From NCBI RefSeq assembly GCF_026571515.1, contig NW_026853980.1, positions 248,001 to 312,000 on the forward strand: 64,000 nucleotides of DNA, written 5' to 3'. The notes beneath the pieces were generated by a model that had not been told where the DNA came from, made no database searches, and was given only the letters and a program-made list of their open reading frames with translations. This stretch comes from Ruditapes philippinarum (lineage: Eukaryota). Both the position numbers and the translations under genes were made by a program. Positions 21,201-48,700 of the stretch are shown here, in pieces (within the stretch, counting starts at the first letter, position 1; each line of letters begins with the position of its first letter).

Positions 21201-24200
21201 AAAAGCACACGACATTGACCTTATCAACAATACCAACTTCACAAAAGCAAATGAAATTGATATCAACAACGAAACAAAATACACAAAAGTACACGGCATT
21301 AACGACAAACGGTAAGTCAACAGTTCACACCAAACAGATGACATTGACTTGTATGACAACATCGGCATAATTGTCGAAGGCGACAAACTTATCTAAAGCA
21401 GCAAAACCCTCGGAAACCAGCAGCAAAGTTAATGCAAAGTATCCGATTTTTAAGTAATGTTTTGTTTTAGATATAAAGCTTCAACATAGCCCTTGTTTCT
21501 TGCTGTAAAGAAGCTGTAGGCAATAAACCTGCTATCCTTTAGTTTTTAGAATACAAAACTTCTGCTCGATCATTCAGTCTAATAACTGATCACCGTTTTG
21601 AATTAAATATACTGTTTGTCCTTTACAGCTTGCATGTGTAAACATGGTAAATGTGCTCCAAATGGATGTATTTGTTATGAAGGATGGTCCGGAAATGATT
21701 GTGACAAAGGTAACTAACTTGGTAGACCTTTGTATGTCTTTTGTTTCTGATAGACTAGTTAAATATGAGGTAAACTATGATTAAGTAGGTTTGAATATAT
21801 TACTCCAAATAGTATGTATAATATTTACAAACAGGTATTTAATCAAACAGCTTTTAAATTGATTGACAAGGATGAAAACAAAATTCTTATTCTTTTCTAA
21901 AATATTATCTGTGCTGTGCGACTGGTGAGCTTTAATTTAAAACATTTAGGTATAGTAGCTATAATAGTAGGGAAAAATATAGGAAAATAAAATAATGGTA
22001 TATGACTTTTCCTGTTGAATTTTTCAGTTGGTGGTTCAAGAACTCATAGTGGAATAAAGACCGATACTGATAGGGTGTGTATTTTATCCAGCAGTTAGCT
22101 GCAGTCATTTTGTTAGGTTTAAATATATCACTATTAACATTGTATACAGATTAAAACAAACATTAGATTAGTAAAAAGGCATACTATTTATATCAAAAAT
22201 CTTAATGTATAAAGATCTGTTTTCTTTTACTAGTCTCCACCGGCGTTTACAGAGTATGTTATTCCACAAATAATACCCTGCACGATAAACAAATCTTGCA
22301 AGATAATGCTTCCTGTAGACGGAAAACCGCGGTAAAGATTTTGTTGATCATTACTGCCAATTTTTGTCTTAAATAAAATATTTTTTATCATAATGATCAT
22401 TATTAAATTTGAACATAATTATTAACTTTATAAGTGCTTTTTATTTGATCTGAACTATTATAGACGTAAGTTTTCATCTGTATTCTAGTAAAGGTCTTTG
22501 TACGACACGGCAAAACGGCGATATTCCGATGACAAGTTGCATGGGATCATGTCGCTTCTTATTGTTGCACTACCGGTTGTTAAATATTTAAAATGGAAGT
22601 TTTTAGAGTAATTTATTATATATTAATCCATGATTTTGAATATTATTTTACAGCCATAAACCAGTTGTAGAACATGGAGATACAGATCCTGGTCTTAACA
22701 CTCTCCCAATTACAGTAAATCCTAATCATGCTGTTCCATGTGATTCAACCATGGCAAAATGTGCATATGAGGCAATTATAACAGTGATACCTACTGAGAT
22801 AAAGTTATATAAATATTGCGTTCAAACAAAGGACTACAAAAGGTTTGGATCAGCAAAATTGTTAACAAAAAAGCACAATTTGCTTCAACACGCGTTTGTT
22901 CATTAAGTTCTTTTAGTTTCAAATTGAAAATTTGAAAATTATCAAAAATAAGTGTTTTAGATATTGATATGAAAACTTTCAAAATGTTTTGACTTTCAAT
23001 TGCTATGTGGTTTTATCTTTGGTTAAGAATGGGGTTATGTAATTGATAATTAGACATATACAAATACAAATATGACATAACTAGTTCAGATGTGTCGATT
23101 AAGTCTTTTTTTAAATAGAAAACATGTACTTGTGCTGAACATATATAACAAATGTTCCATTAAAACTTTTAAAATGCTTTCAAAGATTTAAACTTGATAT
23201 GGGAACATGATGTGTAGGGCACTTTTTTTGAATAACAGTGATACACATACACTATTTTTAATGTATTTGTTCCCAAGTAATGATGATTTTATAATATTTT
23301 GTTGTTTCGTAAATATAAAAATGAGTAAAAATGTCTACATTTATAAATACTTATACAATTAAAAAATTGACATCATTTTTTATGACTTTTTATTTGTTTA
23401 TTTATTTGTTTATTTATTTATTTATTTATTTATTTATTTTCAGCGTTCTTGCGGATGAGTTGTGTTATAAGATTCAAGGAGGTTTGTAAACAAATTTTTG
23501 CTTTTATTGTTTACTTTAACAAGTTTTTTAAAAGGTGTTATTTTTTTAATTCTGTTCAAAACGACATTATTGTGAGTTCAAGATTGAGAGGGAGATATTT
23601 ATTAATTATTAATTCTTTGCAAGTATATGTAGCCGATGCTAATTTAATAAACTAGCTAGCATTTAAAATAAATGAAAAATATTGATATCAAGGCGAAAGT
23701 ATTTGTAAGGAACAGGGATTACACAAGTCCGGGAAAACAAAAATTCTTGATAATGAAATATTTATTTTACTTTTCAGTTAAAGACGAGACAAGTCCAGTA
23801 AGTGCCGTTGTCTAATCTGTCAAAAGCAATTGAAATTTAGTATGTCAGTACTCGTTTTCTTTCAAAAGCACTGTACTTAATATTTTAAGTTAACTAGCAC
23901 ATGTACTATATTGATATTGAATAATATTGTCTGAAGCAATGAAATTTTTTTCTAAAAATATATGTCAGCATATGACTTACATGCGTATGTATTTTGACCC
24001 AATTTTTTCCTAGATCGGGAGAGTAATGTCCTCTGATTAAGCTAACATAGACTTTGTATACTGTATAACTGCAAATGTTTAACTGCGATAGGCATGAAAT
24101 TTTAAAAGAATACTTTGCATTATGTGAACTAACGCACTAGGTCTGTTGATGCAAATCTAATTGATGCTGGGAGAAATAGTTCCCCTGTTTTAGAAAATTA

Positions 24201-29440: not shown

Positions 29441-30949
29441 CGGACACGCGCAATCAGTTAAATTCGAAGAACAACACCCTAATGACAACTGATAGTTCAG
29501 ACATTTTTGATTTTGTATGCCATTTAAAATAGATAATGTTCTGTAAGGACATTTTTTCTACGGTATATTATACTAAATTACAGACTTTCAGGCACTTTCA
29601 AAAATATGTGTTATCTTTTTTTATAAAAAAATATATACGATTTATTGATAAATAATGATATTAAAATACTTTAAGTGAAGAATGTATGTAAAACTCCAAA
29701 TCTCGATATTTTTATATTTGTGTTATAAAGCTTTTGGCAGGTTTCGATTTCATGATATCTATTGTCATATTAAGTAATAATGTCTTCACAGCTCTGTAAC
29801 AATTTGTATGTTATATATTAGTAAAATGTAGTAAGCATTCAATGTCTGTAATCTTTGTCTCCTTCTTCTAAATCTTCAAAAGGGTTTCAACTTCTAAAAC
29901 CATACAAGGAGATAAAATGACGTCAACGAACGTTTTGTTCTTCGTTGTTTGACGTTTTGGTGTCCTTAATTAAAATAGAGACCTTTGTGTGTATTATCAA
30001 CAAAACATTATCGTTGATATTGGGCAAGGAGACGTTTTATGTTCACCCTTCTCCGTTTAAACCTTATCTGTATATTAAATGTAACAAACATGCTTTTAGG
30101 AGGTTACGTTCAGCAATTTTCGCAACATTACATAATTTCTTGATCAATCTCATGTGATAGTAAGATGCATGAAAAACATTATGCATTTAAACAAAATGTA
30201 TCATTTAATAATGATACTCTTGAAGAAAATGTTCTTTATTCTTTACTTTTATTTCTAAAGAGTTCATAGCTCATATATTTTTATGCTTGTAATAAAGGAG
30301 TAATATAAATATATGAATTTATATAACTGATAACCATGAAATTATCTTTTAAAGCAGACATGTACTTTTAAAAAGGATTTGCTTTCAAACGAGAAGTAAG
30401 AAAACTTTTGAAGTTTTATATGCTTTGCTGATTATTCTAGTATGTCAATGATAATGGTCACTCCGTTGGGTTGCCGAATATGAAGTCGTCTGGCTTAGTA
30501 GTGTTTTTACACTTGGGTCCAAGCTTTAAGAAATCAAGCAGGGCTTTAAGCAGGGCACACATTTTTTTGCGCAGTCAATCATTTCTGGTTCCTTAACATA
30601 ATTATAATGTATATCATTCGCCTCCAATCTGAATTTAGTTTAGATCTACTTATATCTTTCTTGTAGATCTGATATCCTTCACCTTCAATCAAATTTGGAT
30701 TTCCGGAGTTTGCTAATTTTAGCCATTAAATTAAATCGTCCGTTACAAATAGGCATTAAAAAGTCAATTCTGTTGATGAAAATATCATAGCACACTTTGC
30801 ATGAACTTTCACAAGGTTTCAGTTACTTTATATTTACTTGTTACAATGGCAAATTATTAAAAGATCCTATTACACAAATTCTTTAGGGTTTATATCACAT
30901 ATATGATGTTCAAATGAAGATTTATCAATATTGTATGGTTCAAAAAGCA

Positions 30950-32370
30950 TTATTTGTTTTAAACAAACATATGTATTTTTATACACAGTGCGCTTATGTG
31001 TACGCAAAGTGTTCAAATTATATTCCACACAGATCTACTTCCCTGTTTAACTGTTTTATAATTTGTATTCTACAGTCACAGCTTTCGTTTGCAGATATTC
31101 GTTCAATGCTTCTTCCCCTGCAATAAAAGAAAACATTGTGTTGTTTCTTCTCTCATAGGAACATGTATCCATGGAAACTGTCAGTGAAATTGAAGACAAT
31201 TAAACTGAAATGAGATTGTTACATTACAAAATTACCAAAAAGTGGTCTCAAATCTCATTAATATCTTGAATTCAACATAAACAATATTATTATTTCCCTT
31301 CAGGATTATTTTTTTGAATCCAGAAAATTAATTTTTTCTCCTTAACGAAACCATTATATATTAGATTCCACTTTTTTCCAACACTGAAGGCAAATTGTGT
31401 GTAACATGATTTTATTCCTAGAAGAAATTTTAATTTAAAAGCATAATATTGTTAAATGTTAAAGTCATAAAAATAATGTTATATGGTTTATTCAAATGCA
31501 TACAAATGTGGTAAATAAAAAGACATGGAAGTGTGGAAAATACAAAATGTATTAAATGTGGTTCATTTTTAGAGCATGAAATAGTGAAAAATGTAAAGGG
31601 CATAAATAAAGGTTAAATAAAAAACAATTCAAAAGGCAATTATTGTTAAATTGAGTATTGGAAAGGCATAAACACATGGTAAAATTAAGGCATGAATATG
31701 CGGTAAAATTAATGCATGATCATGTGGTATAATAAAATAGGATAAAATTGTGGTAAAATTGAATTCACTAGTGCATTAAATTCATTTTCAAATTTACCAT
31801 TGTTTGAAAGATTTGATACAAATTGATATTCTACTTCAGCAACAATTGTTTCACAGAACACACATTTTGCGCAAAATTATTTCAATTAATTTGTTCTAAA
31901 TTTTAACATTTCAAGACGTTTATCACCACCCACTTTATTTTAGATTAAAATAGCAAAAATGATTTTTTTCTACGTGAATGAACTGAACAAGGTCCGAGAA
32001 GGTTACTCAAAATATGAACAATGTGCTTGCTAAATATGCAAATGGATGCTGTACCAAGAACTTGAACACATCTTCTTCACATCCGTTGATAAAAATACTT
32101 GGATGCTCAGTATGTACTTTCACATGATCAGTATGTACTTTCACATGGTGTAAAATGACTATTATTTGACTTAAACAGATATAGAATACAAAATTGTCAG
32201 GGAATTGTCATAATACCAAGTTTAAAAATACAAAGGGTCATAATTCTGCCAAAAGCATCACAGAATCATTCAGGGCACTTCAATGACAATCACGGTGAAA
32301 ATCCTTTAGAAAAATGTAGGAGTTGCACATTGAACGAATATGTTTCATCCAGATACTGACATGGCCTTAT
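30950..32370 (-). repeat. Diverged duplicate of the ALDH1L proximal 3'UTR, last exon and most of the last intron
   Basis: Colinear blocks: 30950-31670 with 42540-43285; 31755-31965 with 44625-44850; 32205-32365 with 46845-47035. Confidence 0.9.
31056..31117 (-). CDS. ALDH1L1: Second copy of the ALDH1L terminal coding exon (alternative last exon or pseudo-exon)
   Basis: Intact acceptor tttcttttattgcag; encodes [20 protein letters not shown]; same 62-nt length and phase as 42660-42721. Confidence 0.55.
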
Positions 32371-33960
32371 TCCAGCTTTCATGGTACCTAGGCTCAGACT
32401 ATATGAGTTCGTTATAGACCAAAAGAACACATCGTCATTAAGGTAAACGTTTTTTACATTTCTATATTAAAAGTAGGTTATTAGTACCAACCACGTTCAG
32501 ATAAGTAAATTTGCAGACCTTTTTTGAAAGATTGAGGGCTTAAAAATATACATTGCCTTATTCAAATTGTTTGCTCAGAGTTTTAAGTAACTAAGTATTA
32601 GAGGTAAAGCTAAAGAAACAGTATGCAGACTTGGTGTTTATCAAGTTTATTCTTACTTCAGAAATTTTCTATCTTATGTGACACTGTTTGAAGCAGTATT
32701 ATTTCTTAAATATAAAACCTTCGTGCTGCAAATAAGATTCGTTCAATATAATTTTACGCAAAAACTTATAATGCTCGTACAAAGTTACTTACATTATATA
32801 TTTTGTTACTGCCTATGGATTTCTTCCAATTAAAGTTTTATGAAAGAAATGTTTTGTTATGTAAATCGATATATAAAATAGCAATATGATAATGTTTTAT
32901 GCGATACAAAGTCTGATATAGTTGGAATGTACTGTTTATCTTTATATACAAGAATTAGATTGTAGTTTGTGACAAAGTTTTTCACTGATTGTCACTGACA
33001 CATTCTGATCGGCTTTATACAAAACCTTAACACTTTGAAATTTAGTTGAGCTGGTTTTGAAAAGAAATCATAGGTCTATTTCATAAAAGCTTGTGAAGAT
33101 TGGTATAAGTTCTGAAATACAAGGCTTACTAGGTTGAAACTCTTTAAAAGTGAAGTGTGTTTTATAGGATTGTAGAAATTTCACAGAGTTACAAAGACTT
33201 GGAAAAATTTCAAGATTCATATAGATATAAGCAATTCTATATTTGTGAATAATTTATAAGGGTCTTTTTTAGTTTTAATTTTGAAGATATTTTTTTCTTA
33301 GTTCTTTGTCATCTGATCAAAACTATTGCATTTTATTCTTCCCTTCAACCATGCAATTATTATCAATAAAACTCTATATGAAAGATCTTGGGGTTGTCCT
33401 TTTAAACATTGTTAAAACTTTAAATTTCAGTATATTGACAGTAATGAAATGCTGAGTGGAGTTTCCAAGAGAATTAACAAGAAATATCTTTTAATTGTCT
33501 TCAATGAATATTACAAATTTCAAAAACATGAACATTCAATTGTGTCAATCCTTTTAAGGTTTAACTTTAAACTGTGCAAAAAAATAAGATTGAATATAAA
33601 GTTATCCTCAAACCATATATTAGTTAAAATCAAACAATGTTATGAAAACAAATAGGTTCATAACAGAGAAAAATAAAATTATATAAAACATTCGTAAAAT
33701 AAAAATTATACTAAAAATACTTGTGCAATTGCAGATCGAACTAAAAATATTAGTCTAAATGTGAACGGTTTACTGCGCTACTAGGGTTTACGTGTAAACG
33801 TTCAATTTGTTTTCTTAATCAAAAAAATGTAACAGTCGATAATAAGATTACTTGCACAACCCATTATACCGAAATAGTATAACCGAAGAATGTAAACGTT
33901 AACGTGTTCTACCTCTACATACCTGCACACCTTAAACTACATTTTCATTTAGGTCATATA

Positions 33961-34035
33961 TATCGTTTTCACTCTCGAGTACCGTTGGGGTAAAATAATA
34001 TGCAAATCAATACAGCACATGACACGAAACCAGAT
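33961..34035 (+). promoter_or_regulatory. Candidate promoter motifs of the B-box gene (IRF-like gttttcactctc, octamer ATGCAAAT at 34000-34007)
   Basis: Motif matches ~280-320 bp upstream of the ATG; short motifs can occur by chance in AT-rich DNA. Confidence 0.25.
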
Positions 34036-34283
34036 ATTTATCCGACAAAGTTTGAAGAATGAAGTAAAGGCTGTTTTAAAACTGGCGTGATTCGAATGTA
34101 TACCAATAATTTGTGTTATTACAACTGTTTATTATACTTATAGTTGATTCAAGTAATTAATTGGGGAACAATGTAACTTTGCTAACTGAAAAGAGAATAC
34201 TATCTTCAGTGAATGTAAACTGTGATTATGTTACAGTAGAAAATGAACTAACAATAAAAGTTTAATATTTAAAAAAAACAAAG

Positions 34284-35657
34284 ATGGCCGAACAAGAAAG
34301 AGGAAGTAAACTATCAAAAGACAACTTTGGAGAATATTTACCGTCTGAGAAAGGAATAAATATCGCAGATGCATCGGTATGTGTAAGCTCTGGAATCAAG
34401 AGCTCAGGAGTTGCTTCAGTTTACAAGAGTTCAGAGGAATTCTATGAATATACCTGCGATCCTTGTAAACATTTTGGAGATTGTTTTGAGGCTGAAGGAT
34501 TTTGTACACATTGCAAGGAATATCTTTGTATCACATGCTTTCGGAGTCATTCCAGGAACAAGGCATCGAAGCACCACACGTTACTTGAGAAAGATAACAT
34601 GCCGAGAAAAAAACCAAAACTCTGCAATCCGTGTAAATTAGCTGGAGACGAAAAAATAGCAGTTGGATATTGTGAAAACTGTTGTGATTTCCTGTGCAAC
34701 GATTGTTACAAGAGCCATCCTAGAAATAAAATGTCAAGGGATCACGTGCTAGTAAAGGATGAGGGACTTGAGGAAACCGAACAAGTTGTTACTTCTTCCT
34801 TTGCTCAAATGAATATCACTAAAGGAAAGACCAGTGGCGGAAATATAGGTGCGAAATTTTCTTACGTTCGAGATATCAATGTTAAGTCAGATACTGACAA
34901 AAAGGACTGTTTAATTGCGAGAATAACGTTAGTTTCTGAAAATGACATTGTCCTTTGTGATGAAGACAATGTATGCTTAAAACTGTTTGATATCAATAGG
35001 AACATAATCAAAGCTGTTCTAGCATTACCATCTAGTTTCTATGGTGTAACAGCGATATCTAATGATGAGATTGCTGTTGTTGGAGAAATTGAAAATGAGA
35101 TACACATTATTTCAATACATGACAGTATGACAATAGACCGTACAATCAAAACAACTGGTACATGTCTAGATTTGAAGATGTTGAACAATCTTTTATATGT
35201 GTCATTGTGGAAACCTACAAAGTTTCAGATACTCCGACCAACTGGGGAAATAACCAAAACGATCAAGCTTGATGATGATGTATTCAAAGATGTTACTCCT
35301 CATTATATAGCTGTGAGTCCTGATGAGACTGTGATCTACATTTCTGACTGGGAAACTAACAAAGTAATATCCCTTGATATGAATGGTAGAATGTTAGCAT
35401 TGTATAATGGTGAGTTAGATTATCCACTCGATATGTTCGTTTCTCCATCTGGATCAGTCTACGTTTGTAGCCAGAGCCAGCACATCGTATACAAGATGAA
35501 TTCAGATCTGAGTGAAGCTTTGGTAATACTAGGACCAGGAGATGGATTAAGGTACCCAACAGCCATGTGTTTGAATGCTAATAATCAGTATATTTACATC
35601 AGCAGTGGAAGAGATGAGGCTGCATATTGTAATAACATAAAAGTCTTTAAGTGTTGA
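34284..35657 (+). CDS. B-box zinc-finger plus NHL-like beta-propeller protein (RING-less TRIM-like), 457 aa
   Basis: Uninterrupted ORF with good start context aagATGG; two CxxC...CxxCx4CxxCx3Hx8H motifs; propeller-like repeats (PHYIAVSPDETVIYISDWETNKVISLD, YPLDMFVSPSGSVYVCS, YPTAMCLN); AATAAA at 35708 and 35932. Confidence 0.93.
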   Translation: MAEQERGSKLSKDNFGEYLPSEKGINIADASVCVSSGIKSSGVASVYKSSEEFYEYTCDPCKHFGDCFEAEGFCTHCKEYLCITCFRSHSRNKASKHHTLLEKDNMPRKKPKLCNPCKLAGDEKIAVGYCENCCDFLCNDCYKSHPRNKMSRDHVLVKDEGLEETEQVVTSSFAQMNITKGKTSGGNIGAKFSYVRDINVKSDTDKKDCLIARITLVSENDIVLCDEDNVCLKLFDINRNIIKAVLALPSSFYGVTAISNDEIAVVGEIENEIHIISIHDSMTIDRTIKTTGTCLDLKMLNNLLYVSLWKPTKFQILRPTGEITKTIKLDDDVFKDVTPHYIAVSPDETVIYISDWETNKVISLDMNGRMLALYNGELDYPLDMFVSPSGSVYVCSQSQHIVYKMNSDLSEALVILGPGDGLRYPTAMCLNANNQYIYISSGRDEAAYCNNIKVFKC

Positions 35658-36516
35658 AGAATATTCATTCTCGAACATTTGCAGATTTACTTTTTATCTC
35701 ATATGTAAATAAACAGATGACTATTGACACTTGGTCAAAAGAGAAACAATTACAATTTAGGGATCAAGTATTTAGTGTTATGAAAGAATTAAGGGATTGC
35801 AAATGATTTTGGAGGTCAATTTTCATGCAGTGTTGCAGTATAAACATAGATAATACAAAACATTAAAAGCTTAGAGAGTTAATTATTTTATACCTTATCC
35901 TTTTAAAAGATCAAAAAATGTAAAAATTAATAATAAAGCTTGGATGTTTGTTTAAAATGTGTCAGACCGAGTGGTATGAAATTCCGTATCAATTTAACTG
36001 AATAACATTTTAATTTTTCATTTCAAATACAAAATTTACGTTAACAACTTCATGAGCACATGATTCCATCTTCATGAATTCACAATCAGGAATCTCGTGA
36101 TAACATGAATTTTATGAATACTCTCCCTGGACATGGCAAAAACAAACAAACAAAACGACAGTTATTTGTTTGTATTTTATTATTATCAACCAAATCTCAA
36201 ATTCACTGATAAGGTAATAAAACTTTTCATCTCCTGAATACCTTAGCAATAATATACTTCAATTTAATGCTGTTTGTTTCTGCTGTAAATTATTACTAGT
36301 TATAAATTCATTAAACATATTATAGCGACATTTCAAATCATGTAAACTAATAAAAAGTCATGTTACATTTCAAATGTTTCTATTTTCTGATATTGGAAAA
36401 AAGTTACCAAATTGTTCTTATGTAATGTTATAGCATTTTTCTGTTACATTATTATCATCAATCACATTACAAACGGTTCATTTTCAACTGTTCTAAAGGG
36501 ATACCAGCTTCGTTAA

Positions 36517-36826
36517 AGGAATTCCACTGAGGTCCAAAAGCCTAAAAACATGAAATTTGAATTCCTTACATAGATCAGCTGGGGCACTTAAAACAATAAG
36601 AAACGCAAAAGATAATTAAGAAATATACTTAGAAATAAATTTAAATTCGTATATTCGTACTATTTTTTCTGTCAAATCTGAATGTAAAGCGTTGGAGATT
36701 TTTATTCTGGAAAACGGAGCGAGCCAACGATCTGAAATTTTGCACACAAGTTATCGGTCTAGAGCTACAGAAATTAGAACATCCATCTTTAGTCAACTTA
36801 AACAAAAACCTCAGTGGAGTCCCACT
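36517..36826. mobile_element. TTAA-flanked MITE (Kolobok-like ends)
   Basis: ttaa|aggaattccactgagg at the left end and cctcagtggagtccc at the right end; a same-family end cttttggacctcagtggagttcct|ttaa occurs at ~58014-58058. Confidence 0.5.
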
Positions 36827-37834
36827 TACATGCCTTATTTATCAAGTATAACATACATTCTTCCATAAATACACGAAACTCCTCAAATTCTTTATAAAAG
36901 AAGACATAAAACCTAACAAATAACCAAAACAAAGGTTTGTTCAACACACCAAAACCAGATAACAAACAATGATACATATTTGACACACATTTTTATAGTC
37001 ACTTCATACACTATTTTGTGATAAAAACGGAGTGGGTAGGAAAAATTATTTTAATAAAAACATGAATTCAAATGTATAAATAATATTCATATAAAATAAT
37101 ACATGCATAAATGAAAGAAATCTCTTTTTAAAAATGCAAACTTAAAATTTCCAAAACCTGATTAGATAAAAAAATGTAATCTAATTCTTCAAAGCCTTAA
37201 GTTTTTAACATTCTTTTTTTCCTAATGATTTTTTTCAAGTCTTAATTGAAAAGCATATAGACAAATAAGAAAGATACAAAAAGAAATTTATTTTAACAGG
37301 ATATGAGTATTGTTTAACATTTAACACAATATTTTCAAACCAGTAAATTAAAACAAAATAAGTAGAAATTAGTTTTATCTTTAGTTGTGTAATCTTTTAC
37401 ATTTACCATCACTTCATCAACCATTTACAGACTCAAACAAACCGAGTCTGCAACATTTCAATTTTGCAATATTTGGCTACCGGAGAAGAACAACTAAATT
37501 CCTTAATCTAGCTTGATAGCTGCTTCACCTTGTTAATAACTGAATTAATATTTCAATCACATTTTCATCTCTTTGTATTTGTATGTATATGAATGAAATG
37601 GCAAATGTGACAATGATACAGCACTTATATTATGTAAGACTAGTAAGGCATTATTCATAAAATACTTTGAGACACCTTCTTTATAAATATTATTCGCTAT
37701 CTTTTTGATTCATTTCATTAACTAACAACAATAAAATCTAACAAAAAGCAATGCTTCTATAAATTGTCTTATTAAGCATCAAATCAAGAACTGCCTCATT
37801 CGTAAATCAGCCCATCCCATAAGCCAGCAAATGA

Positions 37835-39790
37835 AAGTTGTACCTCTGAGGTACAATTAATAATCATAAATGGAGGTATACCTGTGCTATGCAATAAGTA
37901 ATTTTAAGCCAAACATACTGAATGGAGGTTGTACCTCTGCCATGAAATAAGTAATTATAAACCAAACATAATTAAAGAAGAATGTGCATCTACTGTACAA
38001 TAGGTAATTATAAGCCAACATAGTAAGTGGATGATGTACCTCTCCCATAGTAATTATAAGCTAAATAATGTGAAGGAAGGCCAGGCATGTACAGTTGCGA
38101 GCTATTTAGTTAATAACTATTTATAAGTCAAACAAAAGTAATAAAGGATAGATATGTTCAGCTGTATGTTGTACAATAGTTAATTATTAGCCAAATACAG
38201 TGAGTGAAAGCTGTACCTCCTCTGTGCAGTAAATATAAACCAAACATAGTAAATAATGGATGTACCTTTCCTGTACAGTAATTAATAAACAAGCAAATTC
38301 GATGAATTTATATCCCCCGCCGAGTACTGGTTATTATTAACACAACAACTGAAGACATAAGGCTTTATTTATATATTAATCATGGCATAAACAGTAATAT
38401 TCTTTGAACTTGATAAATATTCAGGGCAATAACATAGCCATAACTTTGTGTTAAATAGTAAAATCTGAAAATGCCAATGAGATGTATGCATACTACATAA
38501 CTAATCAAGGGCCATAAATCTGAGTTATAAGTATCTGACTGGAACAATGCGACTATATGCACATATCCTCTTAGTGTCACATAAAGTTTCATTGAATTCC
38601 AGCCAGTAGTAGCAGAGAACTAGCGAGGAAACAAATATTTTTTCTATATGTATACTGCATAACTAATCAAGGGCCATAACTCTGAGTTAAAGTGTCTGAC
38701 CGAAACAAGCCGACGATATGCGCATCTCCTCTTGGTATTGAAGGTTCCCATAAAGTTTCGTTGAATTCCAGCCAGTAGTTGCAGAGAAGTAGCGAGGAAA
38801 CGATTTTTACTCCATATGCATACTGCATAACTAATCAAGGGCCATAACTCTGAGTTAAAGTGTCTGACCGGAACAAGCCGACGATATGCGCATCTCCTCT
38901 TGGTATTGAAGGTTCCCATAAAGTTTCGTTGAATTCCAGCCAGTAGTTGCAGAGAAGTAGTGCGGAAACGAGTTTTACTCTATATGCATACTACATAACT
39001 AATCAAGGGCCATAACTCTGAGTTAAAGTGTCTGACCGGAACAAGCCGACGATATGCGCATCTCCTCTTGATATTGATGATTCCCATAAAGTTTCGTTGG
39101 ATTCCAGCCAGTAGTTGCAGAGAACTACTCCGGAAACGATTTTTACTCTATATGCATACTACATAACTAATCAAGGGCCATAACTCTAAGTTAAAGGGTC
39201 GGACCGGAACAAGCCGACGATATGCGCATCTCCTCTTGATATTGATGATTCCCATAAAGTTTCGTTGAATTCCAGCCAGTAGTTGCAAAGAACTACTCCG
39301 GAAACAAAATTCGGACGACGGACGGATGGATGGACGGACGGACAACGCCAAAACTATATCCCCCTCCCGATTCCATCGGCGGGGGATAATAAATACTGTT
39401 CAGTAAGTATTTATCAGCCAAACATAGTGAATGAAAATTGTACCTCTGCTGTGCAGTAATTATATACCCAACATTGTAAATGAAGGCTGTACCTTTCCTG
39501 TACAGTTAGTAATTATTTTATGCAAAACACAGTGAATTATGGCTGAACATGCACAGCTTACAGCTGTGCAGTGCGCAATTATAAACAATGAATTAAGGTT
39601 GGACACGTACAGTTTACAGCAGCAAGAAATAATAACCCAAACACAGCGGAAGAAGATGTGGCATGTACAGTTGTACGCTGTGCAGTAAGTATTTATAAGT
39701 CAAACAAAAACAATAGAAACCTTACTTATTTGTACAGCTGTATGCTGTAGAGAAAGTAATTATAAGCAAAATATAATGTACAGCAAGCAA
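37835..39790. repeat. Old degenerate ~55-60 bp minisatellite, split by the element at 38288-39390
   Basis: Recurrent aattataagccaaacatagtgaatggag...tgtacctctgctgtgca on both sides of the insertion. Confidence 0.7.
38288..39390 (-). mobile_element. Helentron/HINE-like element with ~169-bp internal repeats (about 5 copies)
   Basis: Subterminal IR tatcccccgccga (38311) and tcggcgggggata (~39376), (GACG/GATG)n microsatellite, aacaag end. Confidence 0.88.
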
Positions 39791-41120
39791 TGACAAAGAA
39801 AAGCAACAAAATCTAACATAAAAACTCAAATATAAAATATCAATGCAACAACTTGTTGAAATATTAGCTACTCTATATCATTTTTGTTATCAATATTACT
39901 ATGAATCTAATAGTTTTAATTTAGACAGCACCAAGAATGAAAATTATTATATTCATTAAATAAACAATATTAATACTGACCAGTTATTTATTCCAATTTA
40001 ACATCAAACAAAATTGAGGTACTGAAATAATTTACCCCACTATCTATAATAGAGGTAACTTTGATTGAAAATATGGAACAAAATAACAACAATGTTTATG
40101 AAACTCACTTTAATTATTAACAAGTGTCCAAACAAATCTTTTGAAAAGATTTTAAGCATAAACTGTGATATAATTATATACCACATCGTTAGGTATGTAA
40201 TATAATATAGCTATATACCAACAAAAAGAGGTATATATTATGATATTTATATACCATACAAATAGGTATTTATCAAGATCATACAGTTATATACCAATAC
40301 CAATATATATCATGATAGAGTTATATACCATAAGGTATATTTTATGAAATAGCTATATACCAATACCAAGAATATATTTCATGTTAATATACAATTGAAC
40401 ATGTCAATTTCCAAAGAAATAAGCCATGACAATATTGTTATATACATTCATTTACAACAATAAGTATTTGTAACTATACAAATACTGCATCTTAATATAC
40501 AGTGTATTTAGAGGTTGCATTTAAAACATCTAATGTTGTAAATAAAAAATACAACAATAATGGCTAGTTTTGTAAGAATAAAGTAATTATATATAGTTTT
40601 TTGGGTTATTAAATTCCATATTTACATGTAACATTTTCCACTTAAAAAAAAACAGTATTTTTCCCTCTAGCTTAAAATTATTTACAATAAAAGATAACTT
40701 ATATGTTGGCTGTTTTCACTTCTTTCAACTAGAGACCATAAATTATTGTTTAATTTCTATAAAAAAAACCCAGCTCTTTTTACATCTTGTAATTGTATTT
40801 CATATAATGGGTGATTAAGTTACAATAAAAATAAGACTATAATTATATATATTTTTTCCATTTTATTTTTTCTATTTTTTAATCTATCAATTTATTTCCA
40901 ATATTCTTGTGTTTGTTTTTCTTCTTTTGGTGTGTGTATAGGGTAGGGTTGGGTAAGGGCCAAGACAGAGAGAGGTTGACTAATGACTATAAAAAAATTG
41001 GAGCAATGCCTTTATTGCCAATCCTCAACAAATGCCATTAAAATAAGTTATATGAGTATTTTTCCTTAATTTGGTGGCCAGTGCTTTTACTGCGTGTTTG
41101 CAGGTAAGACACAACATTTA

Positions 41121-41490
41121 TTTCCATTATTTTAATATTGAGAACATAGCAACACTTTATCAATATTGAATACAACATTTCCATTATTTCAATATTAAAA
41201 ACATAGCAACACTTTATCAATATTGAATACAACATTTCCATTATTTCAATATTAAAAACATAGCAACACTTTATCAATATTGAATACAATATTTCCATTA
41301 TTTCAATATTAAAAACATAGCAACACTTTATCAATATTGAATACAACTTTTCCATTATTTCAATATTAAAAAGATAGCAACACTTTATCAATATTGAATA
41401 CAACATTTCCATTATTTTAATATTAAAAACATAGCAACACTTTATCAATATTGAATTATTTCAATATTTAAAACATAGAAACACTTAATC
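41121..41490. repeat. 57-bp minisatellite, about 6 copies
   Basis: Unit ttccattatttcaatattaaaaacatagcaacactttatcaatattgaatacaacat; accounts for the repetitive ORF at 41038-41448. Confidence 0.93.
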
Positions 41491-42659
41491 AATATCAAAC
41501 ATAGTGAAAATCAAATAGCCATGTACAAACGATTTCAAATTGTACAGGTATGTTTCAATAAAGTTGCAGAATTAACTGATAAAATCTTATTTCTATATCT
41601 GACTACCTAATCTCCTGCAAATTTATAACTATTCGTGGAGAACTAATTTTTGTGCTTTTCGTTGATAGGTATACTCACAAATTTTAGATGCAATGAAATT
41701 TTATTTTATTCCGGAGTAATTTTTTGTATTTTTTTTCTTTCTTTTACTTTTTCTGCTTAAATAGTACATGAATTAAAAAAAAACATGAAAAAAGTTCTTT
41801 TGCACAAAAACCACGAAATTCCATGTGTGACCACAAAATTAAGTAAGTATTGGTATTCACTTCCATAATAATGATAGAAAGGTGCTACTGATGCACTGTG
41901 ACAATGTAGTAGTTTCACTTGGTAATAATTTCATTTATTGCCATTTTATCTGAATATATCTATACCTAACAAATTACCAGTTCATTATGGTATGACACAA
42001 ACAAAGACATTCTAAAAACATAATATAACATGATTTTTATATAAAAAAATCAACAATCAAATCACCCAAACAAAAAACATGATTGTAGAAAATAAAACTT
42101 CCATTTTTTGATACACTTTGTATTAATACATATAAAGTTATCTTCGTCAATAAACAATAGCTGCATTTTTTATCATCGTAATATATGATATTACACTGAT
42201 GAAATACTTAATATTATGTACTGAAACAATAACTGACATTACCCGATTTATTTTTTATTTTTGATAAACTGCCAAATTATTTCTATATATTAATTGTCCG
42301 AACAAATTAACAGTATCATTTAACACATTGTTACAATGTTAATTGACATTATTTGTGTACACATCATTGTGAACACAACAAAGAGTGATGACATCATCAA
42401 TTTTAGTTTAGATTTGGTTCAACAATTCAGTATTAAAAAATAGTGAAATTTATCTAAAATACAAAAAAAAGAAATTTCAGTGTATGTCACTTTTTTTAGT
42501 GTAGTTTTCTTTTTCTGGCACCTTTTTTTATATTTATATCTTTTTATACAAAACTATGTACATTTAAGTACGCACAGTGTGTTTATGTGTAACACAAAGT
42601 ATCAATTCTCTATTGTTCAATATACTCCCCACACAGATCTACTTCCCTGTAAAACTGTT

Positions 42660-42721
42660 TTATAAATTATATTCTACAGTCACCGCTTTTGTCTGCAGAT
42701 ATTCGTTCAATGCTTCTTCCC
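42660..42721 (-). CDS. ALDH1L1: ALDH1L terminal exon (proximal copy)
   Basis: [20 protein letters not shown]. Confidence 0.9.
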
Positions 42722-45700
42722 CTGCAATAAAAGAAAACATTGTTTTATTTTCTCTCACAGGAATGAACATGTATCCATGGTAACTGTCAGTGAAATTGAA
42801 GACAGTTAAACTGAAATGAGGTTGTTAAATTACGCAATTAACAACAAGTGGTCGGAAATCTCATTAATATCTTTACACTATGTGCATTCAACAAAAACAA
42901 CATTATTGTTTCCTTTCAGGACTTTGTTTTTTTAATCCAGAGAATTAATTTTTCTCCTTATTGAAACCAATTGAGCACTTTTTGGATAAGAACTTTTTTC
43001 AAACGCAACAGGAAAACTTTCAGTAACATGAGTACATTCCTAAAAGAAATGTTAAAAGAATAATATTGTAAAATGTTCAAGACATAAAAATACTGGTATG
43101 GTTTATTTTAAAGGCATACAAATGTGGTAAATAAAATGGGTAAATACAAAATGCATTAAATGTGGTTCAATTTTAGGGCATGAAATTGTGGAAAATTTAA
43201 AAGGTAAGAATAGAGGTGAAATAAAAACAATTCAAAAGGCATGTATTTATGGTAAAGTAAAGTACATTGTATTTGAAAGGCATCATTTATATTTCTCAGG
43301 AACTTTAAATTTTGGTATGTTGTAAAAGTTTCCAAAAATTACGCCTTTGCCAAGCAGATGAATTTTTGCTTCTTCAGCTCTCCTGGCAATTGGCATAATT
43401 ATAGGGAAGTATTTTGTATGGAAGTCATGGACCACTTTGTTTACAGTTTGCAACCTTTATGACACATTACTGCATGTTTAACCATAGGGCTGTCATTGAT
43501 GGAAACTTTTGTATCGATATATCTAGAGACAAATATCGACGATACATCGAAATATCGACTTTGACAATAGATTCAATGAAAAACATTATATATATGTTAT
43601 AATTTGGGATCATGGTGTTATGCATGCTTGTATTACACATTACAAATGCTACATACTAACAGAAAGTTTGTTTTTTCTGTTATTCTTGTCACTGATTTTT
43701 GAAAATAGAGTTAAAGGTTCAAGTTAGCCAAGAAAACTAGAAACAAGTGACTTCTCTTATAAGCCAAAATAGAGAGGTACATGTAGATTTACTACCAGAA
43801 TTTTTTTTTAGCTTGTATCGATATGTGAAAGTGTGTATTGATATTGTATCGAATGACGAATATCGATGATATATCGATATCGCAATATTCAATGACTGCC
43901 CTAGTTTAACAGTACTTTCTTCAGTTGTTTTACATTATACATGCAATAAATCCTTTTTTAAATCCTTCTTATACACATATTTGACATTTCTAACGAACTA
44001 AAAAATGAATGGATTTCTAAGGTATGTGCTTTTTACTCAGACCTGATACTCTTTACAGGTGTGTAGAAATAGACAGGATAGAAATTGACGGTATTACTAA
44101 TCAGGTGCAAAATTTTAATGTGCATCAGTCCGATATGCATTTACTTCATATCTGGTGCTTTTGAACCCGCAACCCAAACTTTATCTATGACCTCTATTCG
44201 CTTTTATAAAAACATGTCTGCTATGTTTCGGTTTCAGACATGCCCAGTCAGCTTGTAGCGTAAAAGTGCAACCAATCGCTAAAGTCACGCAATATGAACA
44301 TCTTTAAATCAATCACATTCACCAAATGACAGTTCCAAGGTCAAATCAGTATTCAAAAGCTATTTCATAAAAATTAAGTTCCCAATATCATAATAATAAA
44401 CAAAACTACAATTACCACAACTTTTGTTTCATTAAATCTAATGGAAATTGACTGCAGTGTTTCAATGTCAAGATCTGTTAACCTTTTTTCTAGTTTTTAT
44501 CATGTAATTTCCTTTCTATTTGAAGCAAGCTGAGCATATTCAGTTTTCAATATGCATTTTACTTCATCTTGAGGCACGATTTATTAGATTTTAAATGATT
44601 CTTTTGATATTAAATGTATTATGAAATTGAATTCACCAATGCATTAAATTCATTTATGAATTTACCCTTATTTGGAGGAATTGATACAAAAACAGTTGAT
44701 ATTCTACTTCATTCCATTTGAGCAACAACTGTTTTCACATAATTTGCGCAAATTTCTAACAATAAATTTGTTCTAAATTTGGCATGCTAACATTTCAACA
44801 CATTCATCACCACCCACTTTATTTTAGATTAGAATAGCAGAGAAATGATGTCTTTAGCACTTATCCGAAAACCTTAATATGTTGAGATTATTTTTTTTAT
44901 ATAAAAATGCACCGTAATTTAAACCAGCCATGATATTTTCATTCCCCTCCCCCTCCACAAAGTTACTAGCAGTATTTGTACAATAAATAAATCTGTATCA
45001 GGGCTTAAAGGGACTTCACTAAGGTTTTTTAACATGACAGGAATGGAAATATGTTTCCGAGATTTGTCACCCATTTGACAAAGGTCTGAACTGAATAACT
45101 TGTCTGCAAATTTTAAGCTCATTCCCTCTTTGCGCTTTTCCCGTACATTCATTCTTATTGTGCAATATGACTCAGAAATGAAAACTTTTACAATGTGTTT
45201 CACTCAAATCTAGCTAAGAATCCCACAAAAATAGGTATTCAATCTAATAATTATTCTATTTCTTTATTGTCCTTTTCAGAGTTTTCAATTTCTAGTGCTT
45301 CATTAATCTTCATTAATCTATGTAAAAAAAATTAAAGTGTATGTTTTTATGCTTTTTGACTAAATTGTTTGTATAGAATTAGCTGAATGAGTTCCAAAAA
45401 AATATAAAAAATCAGCATATAATATGAACAATGCAATGAAAACAATTTGGATGTCATGCCGAGGACTTGAACTTGGACTCAAAAATTCTGCACATCCATT
45501 GATATACATTGAATACAGGAATGCATTTGTAATTTCACATGGTGTAACTATTCTGAGAACTTGATAGTAAAAACAAGAGCGATCAGTAATCACATGTGTC
45601 GCCTCATGATGGCCAATTTCATGTTGGGACAAATTTTGTGACAGACGGACAGTGCACAACTAGACTAACCACTTTGTACTGATCATTCCTGTAAAGTTTG

Positions 45701-48700
45701 GATAAAATTGCACAAGTAGTTTATGAGGAGTAGTCCGGACAAGCTTTTGCGTATCTGGCAACACACAGAAAAAAACACCTTTTTATCAAAGGGCCATAAC
45801 TCGGCCAAAAATCATTCAACCGGAAAACCCGTGCAATATGCGCAAGGTCTTGAGCTACAGATCAATCCTGTAAAGTTTCATTGAAATTGCATAAGTGGTA
45901 TAAGAGAAGTAGTCTGGACAAACTTTAAAAATAAAAATTATAAAAGGGCCATAACTCAAACAAAAATCATTGAACCGGAAAATGCTGACAATATGCACAA
46001 CTAGACTTGGTACTGATCATTCCTGTAAAGTTTGGATGAAATTGCACCAGTAGTTTATGAGGAGTAGTCCGGACAAGCTTTTGTGTATCTGGCAACACAC
46101 AGAAAAAGAAACCTTTTTATCAAAGGGCCATAACTCGGCCAAAAATCATTCAACCGGAAAACCCGTGCAATATGCGCAAGGACTTGAGCTACAGATCAAT
46201 CCTGTAAAGTTTCATTGAAATTGCATTAGTGGTATAAGAGAAGTAGTCCGGACAAACTTTAAAATTAAAAATTATTAAAGGGCCATAACTCTGACAAAAA
46301 TCATTGAACCGGAAAATCCTGACAATATGCACAACTAGACTTGGTACTGATCATTCCTGTAAAATTTGGATGAAATTGCACCAGTAGTTTATGAGGAGTA
46401 GTCCGGACAAGTTTTGTGACGGACGGACGGACAGACGGACAGACAGACAGACAGACAGACGGACAGACGGACAGACAGAAGACGGAGAAGTGATCCCTAT
46501 ATGTCGCCACTACTCCGTAGAGGCGACACAACAAAAACATGGATATTAAACGTAGAAATTTTTAGTTCAAAAAGACCTTTAGTTCTGTCAAAATCCATGG
46601 TAGAGTTATAGGCCTTGGATAGTGACCTCCTATTACACTCTCAAATATTTAAGTTTCTGAATTTTCAACACATTCCCTTAACTAGTTTAAGAGACAATAA
46701 ATTGCACACAAAATCGTAACCAAAGTGTGACACAGATCACAAACTGAGTACAATAGCTAGCTCTCTCTCTCTATCCTTCAACTATTTGAGCTAAAATGAA
46801 TGCTTGACACAAGCAAATACTGCACAGATAAGTGTCATAATAATTGTCACAATACCATGTTTGAAAAAGTAAAGGGACTTAATTCTGCCCAAAAAGACCA
46901 AATCACCAAATCAAAGCATCATAACAAAATGACACAGACCACTTGATGACAATCATTCTTTGAAATTTTGGTCTCGAGAAAAAATGGAGCAGTTGCACAT
47001 TGGAAAAAATTGCTTTCATCCAGCTCCTGACATTCAACCTACTTTTTCATGGTTCAGTTTTATGTCATACCAACACTCATATGGTCATATGGCGAATTTC
47101 AAGCTTTACTGATGGAAAAAGGGCTCAGCTACCCCTTTTTGCAATATTTCATGCCCTAACGAGCACCGGAGTAGAACCACAGACATTTCCATTGGCTAGC
47201 ATTCACCAATTCAACAACCAGAGTTTCTTGCTAGAAAACCTGGTTATAAACTGCATGTTAAATAAGCCATGGACATACCAAGATCTTTTCCAAATCCTGA
47301 TTGTTTAAATCCTCCAAATGGTGAGGCAACGTCTGTCTTATTGTAAGTGTTCACAAACACTGTCCCTGCTTTAATACTGTCAGCCACTGTCATGGCCTTG
47401 TTTATGTCCTTGGTAAACACGCCCGAGGCCAGGCCGTATTCTGTATTGTTTGCCCGAGCTATAACTCCCTCGATGTCCCTAAAACGACAAATAAACATAA
47501 ATGTTTATCTTGACATACACGTTATGTTATAATTAAAATAGAAATTACCTTGCTGAATTTCTTAAATGGACTTGTCTAGCTTCCAGCTTTAGATTCTAGG
47601 GGCATAATTTGAACAATCTTAGTAGAGGGCCACTAGATCATGTTACATACCATATATCAAGGCACTAGGCCTTGTCGATTTTGACAAGAAGGTTTTTTTA
47701 AGATTTTCCTATATAACTTTATGCATGTATAAAACTTATGAGCCCCCTGGCAGGGTCCTCTTGACCCTAGGGTTATAATTTGAACAATCTTTTTAAAGGA
47801 CCATTGGATCATGTTGCATACTAAGTTTTAAGGATCTACACCTTCTGGATTTTGATAAGACATTTTTTAAGATTTTGTTTAAAAAAAAACTCTTTTGGTT
47901 GCGATGGCAACCAGAGTTCTTCATGAAATTTCATTCTTTTAACAACATTGGTAGAGCTTTATGCAAGGAACATGCCTGCCAAGTTTAACTGAATTTGTGA
48001 CAGGTGACCTAATTAAATTTGTGTCTATTTCAAACATGAAATTAAATTGACTTAGATATTTTCAACATATGAAATATTTCCAATTAATCATTTGTTTATT
48101 TTAAAAATGTTTAAATCATTCAGTGACTTAGTGCCAAGATGGACAGAAGTTGTAAATGTATTTATGTACAAAACACAATGTCACTATCAAAAATTTTACT
48201 TATCTTTATTCATATATTTTCATATTCATTTTAAACTTATAACCTGTTACAACTGCTATGATTCAACAATTGGTCGAAAAAACTCTAAATGGGCAGAATT
48301 TTTGAAAACTTGACAGTAATTACTGAATTACATATGGATTTAATCACTACAGTTTTGGTGCAGTACCTACAAACCCTTTCAGAAATAGTGATAGTAAAGT
48401 ATCTTTTTTTTCACTGCTACTTACAATTTTCATTCATTATTGTATATAAATCATGTGAACAGATGAATTGAATGTCTTTGATTGCATTTGGACGGGTGAA
48501 ATTTAACATTTAATCATTCCAACACCTTGTCCAATGTATATACCGGAATACGACATTCAGTGTGGCTCCCACACTTATTCTAGTCTCACTCATTACTTAT
48601 GGTATTGGCATGGTAACTTCTGAATGGAATGGTATGGTACATCATTTATGGTAGTAAATAAATCCCTTACCCATCCATGAATTTTGAAATAATCATAACA

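What the first reader, a model, noticed from the sequence alone, without database searches (positions are those of the whole stretch)
31056..42721. Duplicated ALDH1L terminal exon that looks selectively maintained: candidate alternative last exon
Seen: the 62-nt last coding exon occurs twice, 11.6 kb apart (42660-42721 and 31056-31117). Both copies have the same intact acceptor, phase and stop codon. All five differences fall at third codon positions: CAG/CAA, ACA/ACG, GCG/GCT and TAT/TAC are synonymous and AAT/AAA changes N to K. The co-duplicated intron and UTR carry many substitutions and indels. The duplication stops before the penultimate exon, so the distal copy can only be expressed by splicing from the donor at 47278. 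Inference: two mutually exclusive 3' ends with different 3'UTRs for a folate enzyme.
Basis: partly seen in the sequence, partly recalled or inferred. Interest (0 to 1): 0.78.

Follow-up and report, generated by a model that had tools for sequence, protein, structure and literature searches.

The report
Spare copy of ALDH1L last exon
A folate-enzyme gene in this animal genome has a second, still intact copy of its last coding exon 11.6 kb downstream, but the RNA we could read uses the first copy, so the second is most likely an unused leftover of a local duplication.

Summary
The 62-nt last coding exon of a minus-strand ALDH1L-type gene occurs twice, at 42721-42660 and 31117-31056. The copies are 57/62 identical, with the same acceptor, phase and stop. 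All five differences are at third codon positions. The copy belongs to a ~1 kb block (end of the last intron, the exon and ~100 nt of 3'UTR). Three contigs of the assembly carry the block, so it is not an assembly artefact.

In four RNA-seq runs from four studies, 46 reads join donor 47279 to acceptor 42721. The only exon variant listed is 42669 (TAT>TAC, 45 of 45 reads). No distal-specific letters appear among the 41 rows shown, but 624 rows were hidden, so minor use cannot be excluded.

The selection signature is weaker than claimed. Two of the five differences are private to the proximal copy. At most three lie on the distal lineage, and one of those (N/K) is polymorphic. Exon conservation against the flanks gives only P about 0.02-0.03. 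A third, partial copy of the locus (C13394) lacks the distal exon.

Most likely this is an intact but unused relic. A tissue-specific alternative last exon keeps roughly 0.3 probability.

The parts
47279..47478 (-). Penultimate coding exon of the ALDH1L-type gene (200 nt). The donor GT is at 47278-47277, and the exon's last base G is the first base of the split Gly codon.
   Evidence: Sequence read. Matches Pfam Aldedh positions 382-446, E 8.6e-23. Genome six-frame hit C2467:295274-295498. 100% identical to P0001, which its source names formyltetrahydrofolate dehydrogenase.
42722..47278 (-). Last intron (4,557 nt), removed in mRNA.
   Evidence: Joint 42720|47278 'skips 4557', CT..AC on the + strand (GT..AG on the minus strand). 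Read counts are 6, 19, 9 and 12 in X9, X10, X18 and X19, 46 in all.
42660..42721 (-). Proximal last coding exon, the one in use. It encodes (G)[19 protein letters not shown] and a stop.
   Evidence: junction reads. Some reads carrying the 42669 variant have 0 other differences from this copy (X10 and X19).
42542..42659 (-). Proximal 3'UTR, the part that is homologous to the distal copy. RNA depth falls to near zero below about 42560.
   Evidence: for the end of homology. Depth bins: for X19, 7.35/3.73 in 42561-42747 against 0.03/0.1 in 42374-42560.
42542..44855 (-). Proximal copy of the duplicated block (42542-43283 and 44611-44855), interrupted by 1.3 kb (43284-44610) that the distal copy lacks.
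   Evidence: BLAST pairs. RNA reads on both strands over 43309-44056 suggest the extra piece is an expressed repeat.
30957..31969 (-). Distal copy of the block: about 850 nt of intron-derived sequence, the exon copy and about 100 nt of UTR-derived sequence.
   Evidence: 77.9% identity over 763 columns and 75.3% over 251 columns to the proximal block. The same block is on contigs C9291 and (intron part only) C13394.
31056..31117 (-). Distal copy of the last exon. It is intact (acceptor AG, frame, TAA) and encodes ...EYKL here and ...EYNL in C9291.
   Evidence: No RNA support was seen. No indexed RNA run holds its words.
30849..30957 (.). Interspersed repeat of about 105 nt that begins where proximal/distal homology ends.
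   Evidence: More than 30 contigs match at 84-95%.
34284..35657 (+). Intact 457-aa single-exon ORF with a B-box zinc finger. It lies on the opposite strand, in the 10.6 kb spacer between the two exon copies.
   Evidence: ORF. PF22586 ANCHR-like B-box, E 2.8e-6, 27.7 bits against a cut-off of 27.

Best explanation
A local DNA duplication copied the 3' end of an ALDH1L-type (10-formyltetrahydrofolate dehydrogenase) gene: the last ~0.9 kb of the final intron, the 62-nt last coding exon and the short 3'UTR. The copy now lies 11.6 kb downstream on the same strand. It is separated from the original by a spacer holding repeats and an antisense B-box gene.

The proximal exon is the working terminal exon (shown). 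The distal copy still has a usable acceptor, frame and stop (shown). It is most likely not used, or used only marginally. It is a short relic that has stayed intact partly by chance and partly because the exon has mutated more slowly than its A/T-rich, indel-prone flanks (inferred). If it were spliced, it would give the same protein, or a single N>K change at the next-to-last residue, with a different, repeat-derived 3'UTR.
For: The duplication is real and old.
- Three contigs carry the distal block.
- Quartet site patterns favour (distal,distal)|(proximal,proximal) by 12 to 4 to 1, among 403 ungapped columns.

The proximal exon is the one used.
- 46 junction reads join 47279 to 42721 in 4 of 4 runs from 4 studies.
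- The only exon variant shown is 42669, in 45 of 45 reads.
- Reads with that variant have 0 other differences from the proximal copy in X10 and X19.
- Depth drops about 100-160 nt after the stop, with no read-through in X19 (all).

The selection signal is weak.
- 2 of the 5 differences are private to the proximal copy and at most 3 are on the distal lineage.
- One of those is a non-synonymous polymorphism.
- With 16 indel events per 698 flank columns, the chance of no indel in 62 nt on one lineage is about 0.49.
- An intronic stretch is as well kept as the exon: 11 purely intronic 62-column windows have 5 or fewer differences.

The distal exon looks dispensable or poorly equipped.
- A third, partial copy of the locus (C13394) keeps the proximal exon but ends 72 nt before the distal exon.
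- The distal UTR runs into interspersed repeats after about 100 nt.
- The first canonical AATAAA I can read is about 800 nt downstream of its stop.
Against: - The distal exon differs from both proximal versions at 3 of 62 sites against 13.4% in the flanks, P = 0.027.
- All three sites are third positions, P = 0.035.
- The exon has no indel, stop or splice-site damage.
- C2467 and C9291 differ at only 2 of 300 sites around the exon against 9.7% overall, although 150-nt bins range from 76% to 100%.
- The immediate 50-nt flanks on both sides are more diverged than the exon: 80% and 74% against 92%.
- The RNA test had low power: 46 junction reads, four runs of unknown tissue, and 624 of 665 variant rows hidden.
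Confidence: 0.6

Rival explanations
1. This is a working alternative last exon. In some tissue, stage or condition, transcription runs past the proximal poly(A) site and donor 47279 is spliced to 31117. The result is the same enzyme with a different 3'UTR, and purifying selection keeps the distal exon intact.
For: - The acceptor, frame and stop are intact.
- All differences are at third positions.
- The exon is better kept than its flanks, P = 0.02-0.03.
- C9291's copy encodes exactly the proximal peptide.
- C2467 and C9291 are nearly identical around the exon.
- Duplicated terminal exons used in a mutually exclusive way are known, for example Drosophila pip (passages read in PMC9013439).
Against: - No distal letters or distal junction were seen in 4 runs with 46 proximal junction reads.
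- There is no read-through past the proximal 3' end in X19.
- Both forms give the same protein, so only a UTR effect could be selected.
- The distal UTR is repeat-derived.
- An antisense gene lies in the would-be 16-kb intron.
- The partial copy on C13394 lacks the distal exon.
- Two of the five 'synonymous' differences belong to the proximal lineage.
Confidence: 0.3
2. The extra similarity of the exon comes from a short gene-conversion tract between the two copies some time after the duplication, not from selection on the distal copy.
For: The two copies lie 11.6 kb apart in the same orientation. High identity is patchy and also covers an intronic stretch 51-100 nt upstream, at 47 of 50.
Against: The 50 nt on either side of the exon are only 80% and 74% identical, so a tract would have to coincide closely with the exon. 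I made no direct test.
Confidence: 0.07
3. The distal copy is an assembly artefact: a haplotype or mis-joined contig.
For: The assembly holds redundant contigs for this region (C9291, C13394).
Against: - The proximal and distal flanks are only about 78% identical with many indels, far below the 90-99% seen between redundant contigs.
- C9291 independently carries spacer, distal block and downstream DNA.
- C13394 independently carries distal block (intron part), spacer, proximal block and gene.
Confidence: 0.03

Closest known systems
Tandem exon duplication giving mutually exclusive terminal exons (for example the Drosophila pip gene, as described in PMC9013439; passages read)
   Same: A homologous copy of the terminal exon lies downstream in the same orientation. 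It has its own acceptor and stop, and it could only be used instead of the first copy, never together with it.
   Different: Here use of the second copy is not shown. The two copies encode the same peptide. They are 11.6 kb apart with an antisense gene between them. There are only two copies.
Partial (3'-end) gene duplicates or exon relics left by segmental duplication
   Same: Only a fragment of the gene is copied (about 1 kb). Its flanks decay with substitutions, indels and repeat insertions, and there is no transcript evidence.
   Different: The exon copy itself is fully intact and somewhat better kept than its flanks (P about 0.02-0.03). A pure relic does not predict this.
ALDH1L1/ALDH1L2 (10-formyltetrahydrofolate dehydrogenase) genes of animals
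   Same: The domain order is formyltransferase N and C exons upstream, then Aldedh exons, all on one strand of contig C2467. Fragments 74-100% identical to the penultimate exon are named formyltetrahydrofolate dehydrogenase, AL1L1 or AL1L2 by their sources.
   Different: I know of no duplicated terminal exon reported for this family. The search for 'ALDH1L1' plus 'bivalve' listed 1 paper, which I did not read. The search for 'exon duplication' plus 'alternative last exon' listed 4 papers, none on this gene by title.

Membership tests
ALDH1L (10-formyltetrahydrofolate dehydrogenase) | C-terminal aldehyde dehydrogenase domain (Pfam PF00171) | tested here: met
   Exons at window 47274-47498 (profile positions 374-449, 86.7 bits) and 58509-58697 (positions 164-226, 72.1 bits). 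The penultimate-exon peptide scores E 8.6e-23.
ALDH1L (10-formyltetrahydrofolate dehydrogenase) | N-terminal formyltransferase domain (PF00551 and PF02911) in the same gene | tested here: met
   Minus-strand hits on the same contig, 9.5-13 kb beyond the window's end: C2467:324951-325184 and 323981-324151 (PF00551) and 321532-321633 (PF02911, 32 bits). That they belong to the same transcript is inferred from order and strand, not shown.
ALDH1L (10-formyltetrahydrofolate dehydrogenase) | Acyl-carrier-like linker with a phosphopantetheine site between the two domains | not tested
   No search was made.
ALDH1L (10-formyltetrahydrofolate dehydrogenase) | Closest named relatives are ALDH1L proteins rather than other ALDH classes | tested here: met
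   of the 120 proteins listed (546 hits at E <= 0.001), the named ones are formyltetrahydrofolate dehydrogenase, AL1L1, AL1L2 or cytosolic 10-formyltetrahydrofolate dehydrogenase-like, plus two 'hypothetical protein' entries and one generic 'acyl-CoA reductase-like NAD-dependent aldehyde dehydrogenase' (P0061). Only the 66-aa exon was searched.
Alternative last exons born by terminal-exon duplication | Two homologous terminal exons, each with an intact acceptor, frame and stop | tested here: met
Alternative last exons born by terminal-exon duplication | Transcripts joining the shared donor to each of the two acceptors | tested here: inconclusive
   Proximal: 46 junction reads in 4 of 4 runs.
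Alternative last exons born by terminal-exon duplication | A poly(A) site after each exon | tested here: inconclusive
   Proximal: depth ends about 100-160 nt after the stop, but no end cluster was reported (table 6: none). Distal: not tested. The first canonical AATAAA is about 800 nt downstream (read by eye).
Alternative last exons born by terminal-exon duplication | Both exons conserved in related species | not testable with these tools
No other tool here holds related animal genomes.

The most novel reading that the evidence does not exclude
The distal exon is a selected, tissue- or condition-specific alternative terminal exon. It leaves the folate enzyme unchanged but swaps its short 3'UTR for a longer, repeat-derived one. 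That would be a regulatory isoform created by duplicating a gene's 3' end and kept for as long as the flanks took to diverge by about 20%.
Probability: 0.25. Interest if true: 0.45.

Novelty: new member of a known kind. Interest (0 to 1): 0.3.

Why it matters
If the distal copy were used, it would be a clean natural example of 3'UTR diversification by duplication of a terminal exon with no change to the protein, in a central one-carbon-metabolism enzyme. As things stand, it mainly shows how a short exon copy can look selectively maintained. Part of the synonymous-only pattern comes from the functional partner copy, and the statistics of a 62-nt exon are too weak to decide without transcripts.

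Tried and rejected
- **Spliced RNA contigs via the protein word search.** I searched with the penultimate-exon peptide alone. I read 16 of the 120 listed hits (546 at E <= 0.001). All 16 are single-exon ORFs that run on past the exon's end, and none carries the full last-exon peptide, so they give no transcript evidence.
- **Metagenome scan.** A 27-nt distal-UTR string gave 0 matches.
- **Indexed public runs.** Only 2 runs hold part of the 13 sampled words of the distal exon plus UTR (shares 0.31 and 0.23). Neither is on record as RNA. All 22 RNA runs listed for the species are unindexed raw reads of 2026, so this says nothing about expression.
- **C13394 as a simple allele: rejected.** Its 54 kb downstream of the breakpoint shares only one 400-nt repeat match with 81 kb of C2467, and it matches other contigs instead. 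Only one ALDH1L-type formyltransferase region exists in the assembly. C13394 is therefore a partial copy in another context, or a large structural variant.
- **RNA-mediated (retrocopy) origin: not adopted.** The block ends near the mRNA 3' end, which prompted the idea. But the copy contains intron sequence and sits 11.6 kb away in the same orientation.
- **Earlier notes of the scan.** Nothing was recorded for this place.
- **Supplementary files of papers** were not consulted and bear on no claim here.
Full report
**Observation.** The gene lies on the minus strand. Its penultimate coding exon is 47478-47279, with the donor GT at 47278-47277.

The last coding exon is 42721-42660. A second copy lies at 31117-31056. 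In the pairwise alignment the two exons are 57 of 62 identical with no gap. The 27 intron bases before both acceptors are identical, and both copies end in TAA.

Read from the donor (G|GG GAA GAA ...), the five differences are CAG/CAA, ACA/ACG, GCG/GCT, TAT/TAC and AAT/AAA. All are third positions.

The copy is part of a block: distal 31969-30957 against proximal 44855-42542. Identity is 77.9% over 763 columns and 75.3% over 251 columns. The proximal copy has 1.3 kb extra at 43284-44610.

The flanks are more diverged than the exon:

| Region | Matches | Mismatches | Gap columns |
|---|---|---|---|
| Upstream flank | 449 | 85 | 55 |
| First 139 downstream columns | 86 | 34 | 19 |

No other exon of the gene is duplicated downstream.

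**What the gene is.** The penultimate exon matches Pfam Aldedh positions 382-446 (E 8.6e-23). A second Aldedh exon lies at window 58509-58697.

On the same contig and strand, 9.5-13 kb beyond the window's end, there are Formyl_trans_N and Formyl_trans_C exons. This is the ALDH1L domain order.

Short database proteins 74-100% identical to the exon are named formyltetrahydrofolate dehydrogenase, AL1L1 or AL1L2 by their sources. I searched the gene exon by exon. I did not build or search a joined spliced model.

**Is the duplication real?** The window is C2467:248001-312000 of a 1.41-Gb assembly. Two other contigs carry the region.
- C9291 (18.8 kb) is collinear with window 28366-35756.
- C13394 is collinear with window 31189-57966.

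Proximal and distal flanks are about 78% identical. Redundant contigs are 90-99% identical to the window in this area. A haplotype or mis-join artefact is therefore very unlikely.

**What the other copies say.**

C9291's distal exon is intact and reads AAT where the window reads AAA. It therefore encodes exactly the proximal peptide, and the N/K difference is a polymorphism. Overall, C9291 and the window differ at 279 of 2,891 aligned sites (90.3% identity). In the two 150-nt bins holding the exon and its upstream intron they differ at 0 and 2 sites. Other bins range from 76% to 98.7%.

C13394's proximal exon reads CAG ACA GCT TAC AAT. Only 3 separate the distal exon from both proximal versions.

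C13394 also has the intron part of the distal block. It shares a 13-nt indel with the window's distal copy. Quartet site patterns favour (distal,distal)|(proximal,proximal) by 12 to 4 to 1, among 403 ungapped columns. The block duplication is therefore older than the split between C2467 and C13394.

In C13394, homology stops 72 nt before the distal acceptor, at an A-run followed by unrelated DNA. That version lacks the distal exon.

C13394's next 54 kb shares no collinear sequence with 81 kb of C2467 and matches other contigs instead. The assembly holds only one ALDH1L-type formyltransferase region. C13394 is thus a partial copy in another context or a large structural variant, not a simple allele.

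**Strength of the selection argument.**
- Five of five differences at third positions has a chance of 0.0031. However, changes on the proximal exon are filtered by selection in any case.
- For the three differences that can lie on the distal lineage, the figure is 0.035. One of the three is non-synonymous.
- Three differences in 62 sites against a flank rate of 13.4% gives P = 0.027. Five in 62 against a pairwise flank rate of 18.1% gives P = 0.022.
- 57 of 728 sliding 62-column windows have 5 or fewer differences. 46 overlap the exon and 11 are purely intronic.
- Flank indels number 16 events in 698 columns. The chance of no indel in 62 nt on one lineage is about 0.49.

Together these are suggestive of constraint but not decisive. 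The case was also picked out because it looked intact.

**RNA.** No indexed run on record as RNA holds the distal exon plus UTR (13 sampled words). Two runs of unknown kind hold shares of 0.31 and 0.23. All 22 RNA runs listed for the species are unindexed raw reads of 2026.

I laid four of them from four studies (X9 PolyA, X10 cDNA, X18 and X19 Oligo-dT) on window 42000-47600, at 92% likeness and 2% minimum share. At this setting, reads spliced to the distal exon should also lay on the proximal exon and show up as variant letters.

Results:
- The joint 47279>42721 has 6, 19, 9 and 12 reads, 46 in all.
- Within the last exon, the only variant row shown is 42669 A>G (TAT>TAC), in 45 of 45 reads.
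- Some of those reads have no other difference from the proximal copy (X10, X19).
- No row is shown for 42693, 42690, 42684 or 42666.
- Only 41 rows were shown and 624 hidden. I can therefore say only that proximal letters are the clear majority in every run, not that distal letters are absent.
- Depth over the last exon is only 2-10 fold.
- Depth falls to near zero below about 42560 (X19: 0.03/0.1). This puts the mRNA end roughly where proximal/distal homology ends (42542).

The tissues of the runs are unknown to me.

**Surroundings.** The 10.6-kb spacer holds tandem repeats. It also holds an intact 457-aa plus-strand ORF with a B-box domain.

The distal copy's homology ends at 30957, exactly where a ~105-nt interspersed repeat with more than 30 copies begins. 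By eye, the first canonical AATAAA after the distal stop is about 800 nt away.

**Verdict.** The most likely reading (0.6) is an old local duplicate of the gene's 3' end whose exon copy is intact but unused.

A tissue-specific alternative last exon that changes only the 3'UTR remains possible (about 0.3). Duplicated terminal exons used in this way are a known kind, for example Drosophila pip (passages read in PMC9013439; listing).

Gene conversion (0.07) and assembly artefact (0.03) are minor rivals.

Searches for this gene family with such an exon found nothing by title. One search listed 4 papers and one search listed 1; I saw the listings only.

Noticed in passing
window 34284-35657 (+): An intact 457-aa single-exon ORF with two B-box-like Cys/His motifs (Pfam PF22586, E 2.8e-6). 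It lies antisense in the spacer between the two exon copies. Diverged copies are on C9291 (72% and 86%) and C13394 (85%).
   Followed up: partly
window 45553-46674: A repeat in the last intron (334-nt and 155-nt tandem units plus a (GACA)n run at 46418-46486) is covered at roughly 100-900 fold per orientation by RNA reads in all four runs. The neighbouring ALDH1L exons have 2-50 fold. It is probably a highly expressed multi-copy element.
   Followed up: no
window 42669: The assembly reads TAT (Tyr) in the proximal last exon, but 45 of 45 RNA reads from four runs read TAC, as do C13394 and both distal copies. The assembled letter is a rare allele or an error.
   Followed up: partly
window 43284-44610: A 1.3-kb piece is present in the proximal intron copy but absent from the distal block. 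RNA reads lie on both strands over 43309-44056 at 2-13 fold, with many variant letters, which suggests a later insertion of an expressed repeat.
   Followed up: no
window 31292-31762 versus C9291: C9291 lacks this 471-bp stretch of the distal block's intron part. The deletion ends 174 nt upstream of the distal exon and leaves it untouched.
   Followed up: partly
window 58866-61150 and 61468-62254: Long tandem arrays (period about 145 nt, 88-92% between copies) lie next to the Aldedh exon at 58509-58697. I did not check whether they are related.
   Followed up: no
C13394:140860-141676 (L008): An element with ~240-nt terminal inverted repeats is present at 94-99% identity on dozens of contigs. 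It looks MITE-like and recently active.
   Followed up: no
window 20785-21315 (+): An ORF holding a calcium-binding EGF-like motif ([16 protein letters not shown]...), probably an exon of a plus-strand gene downstream of the distal exon copy.
   Followed up: no
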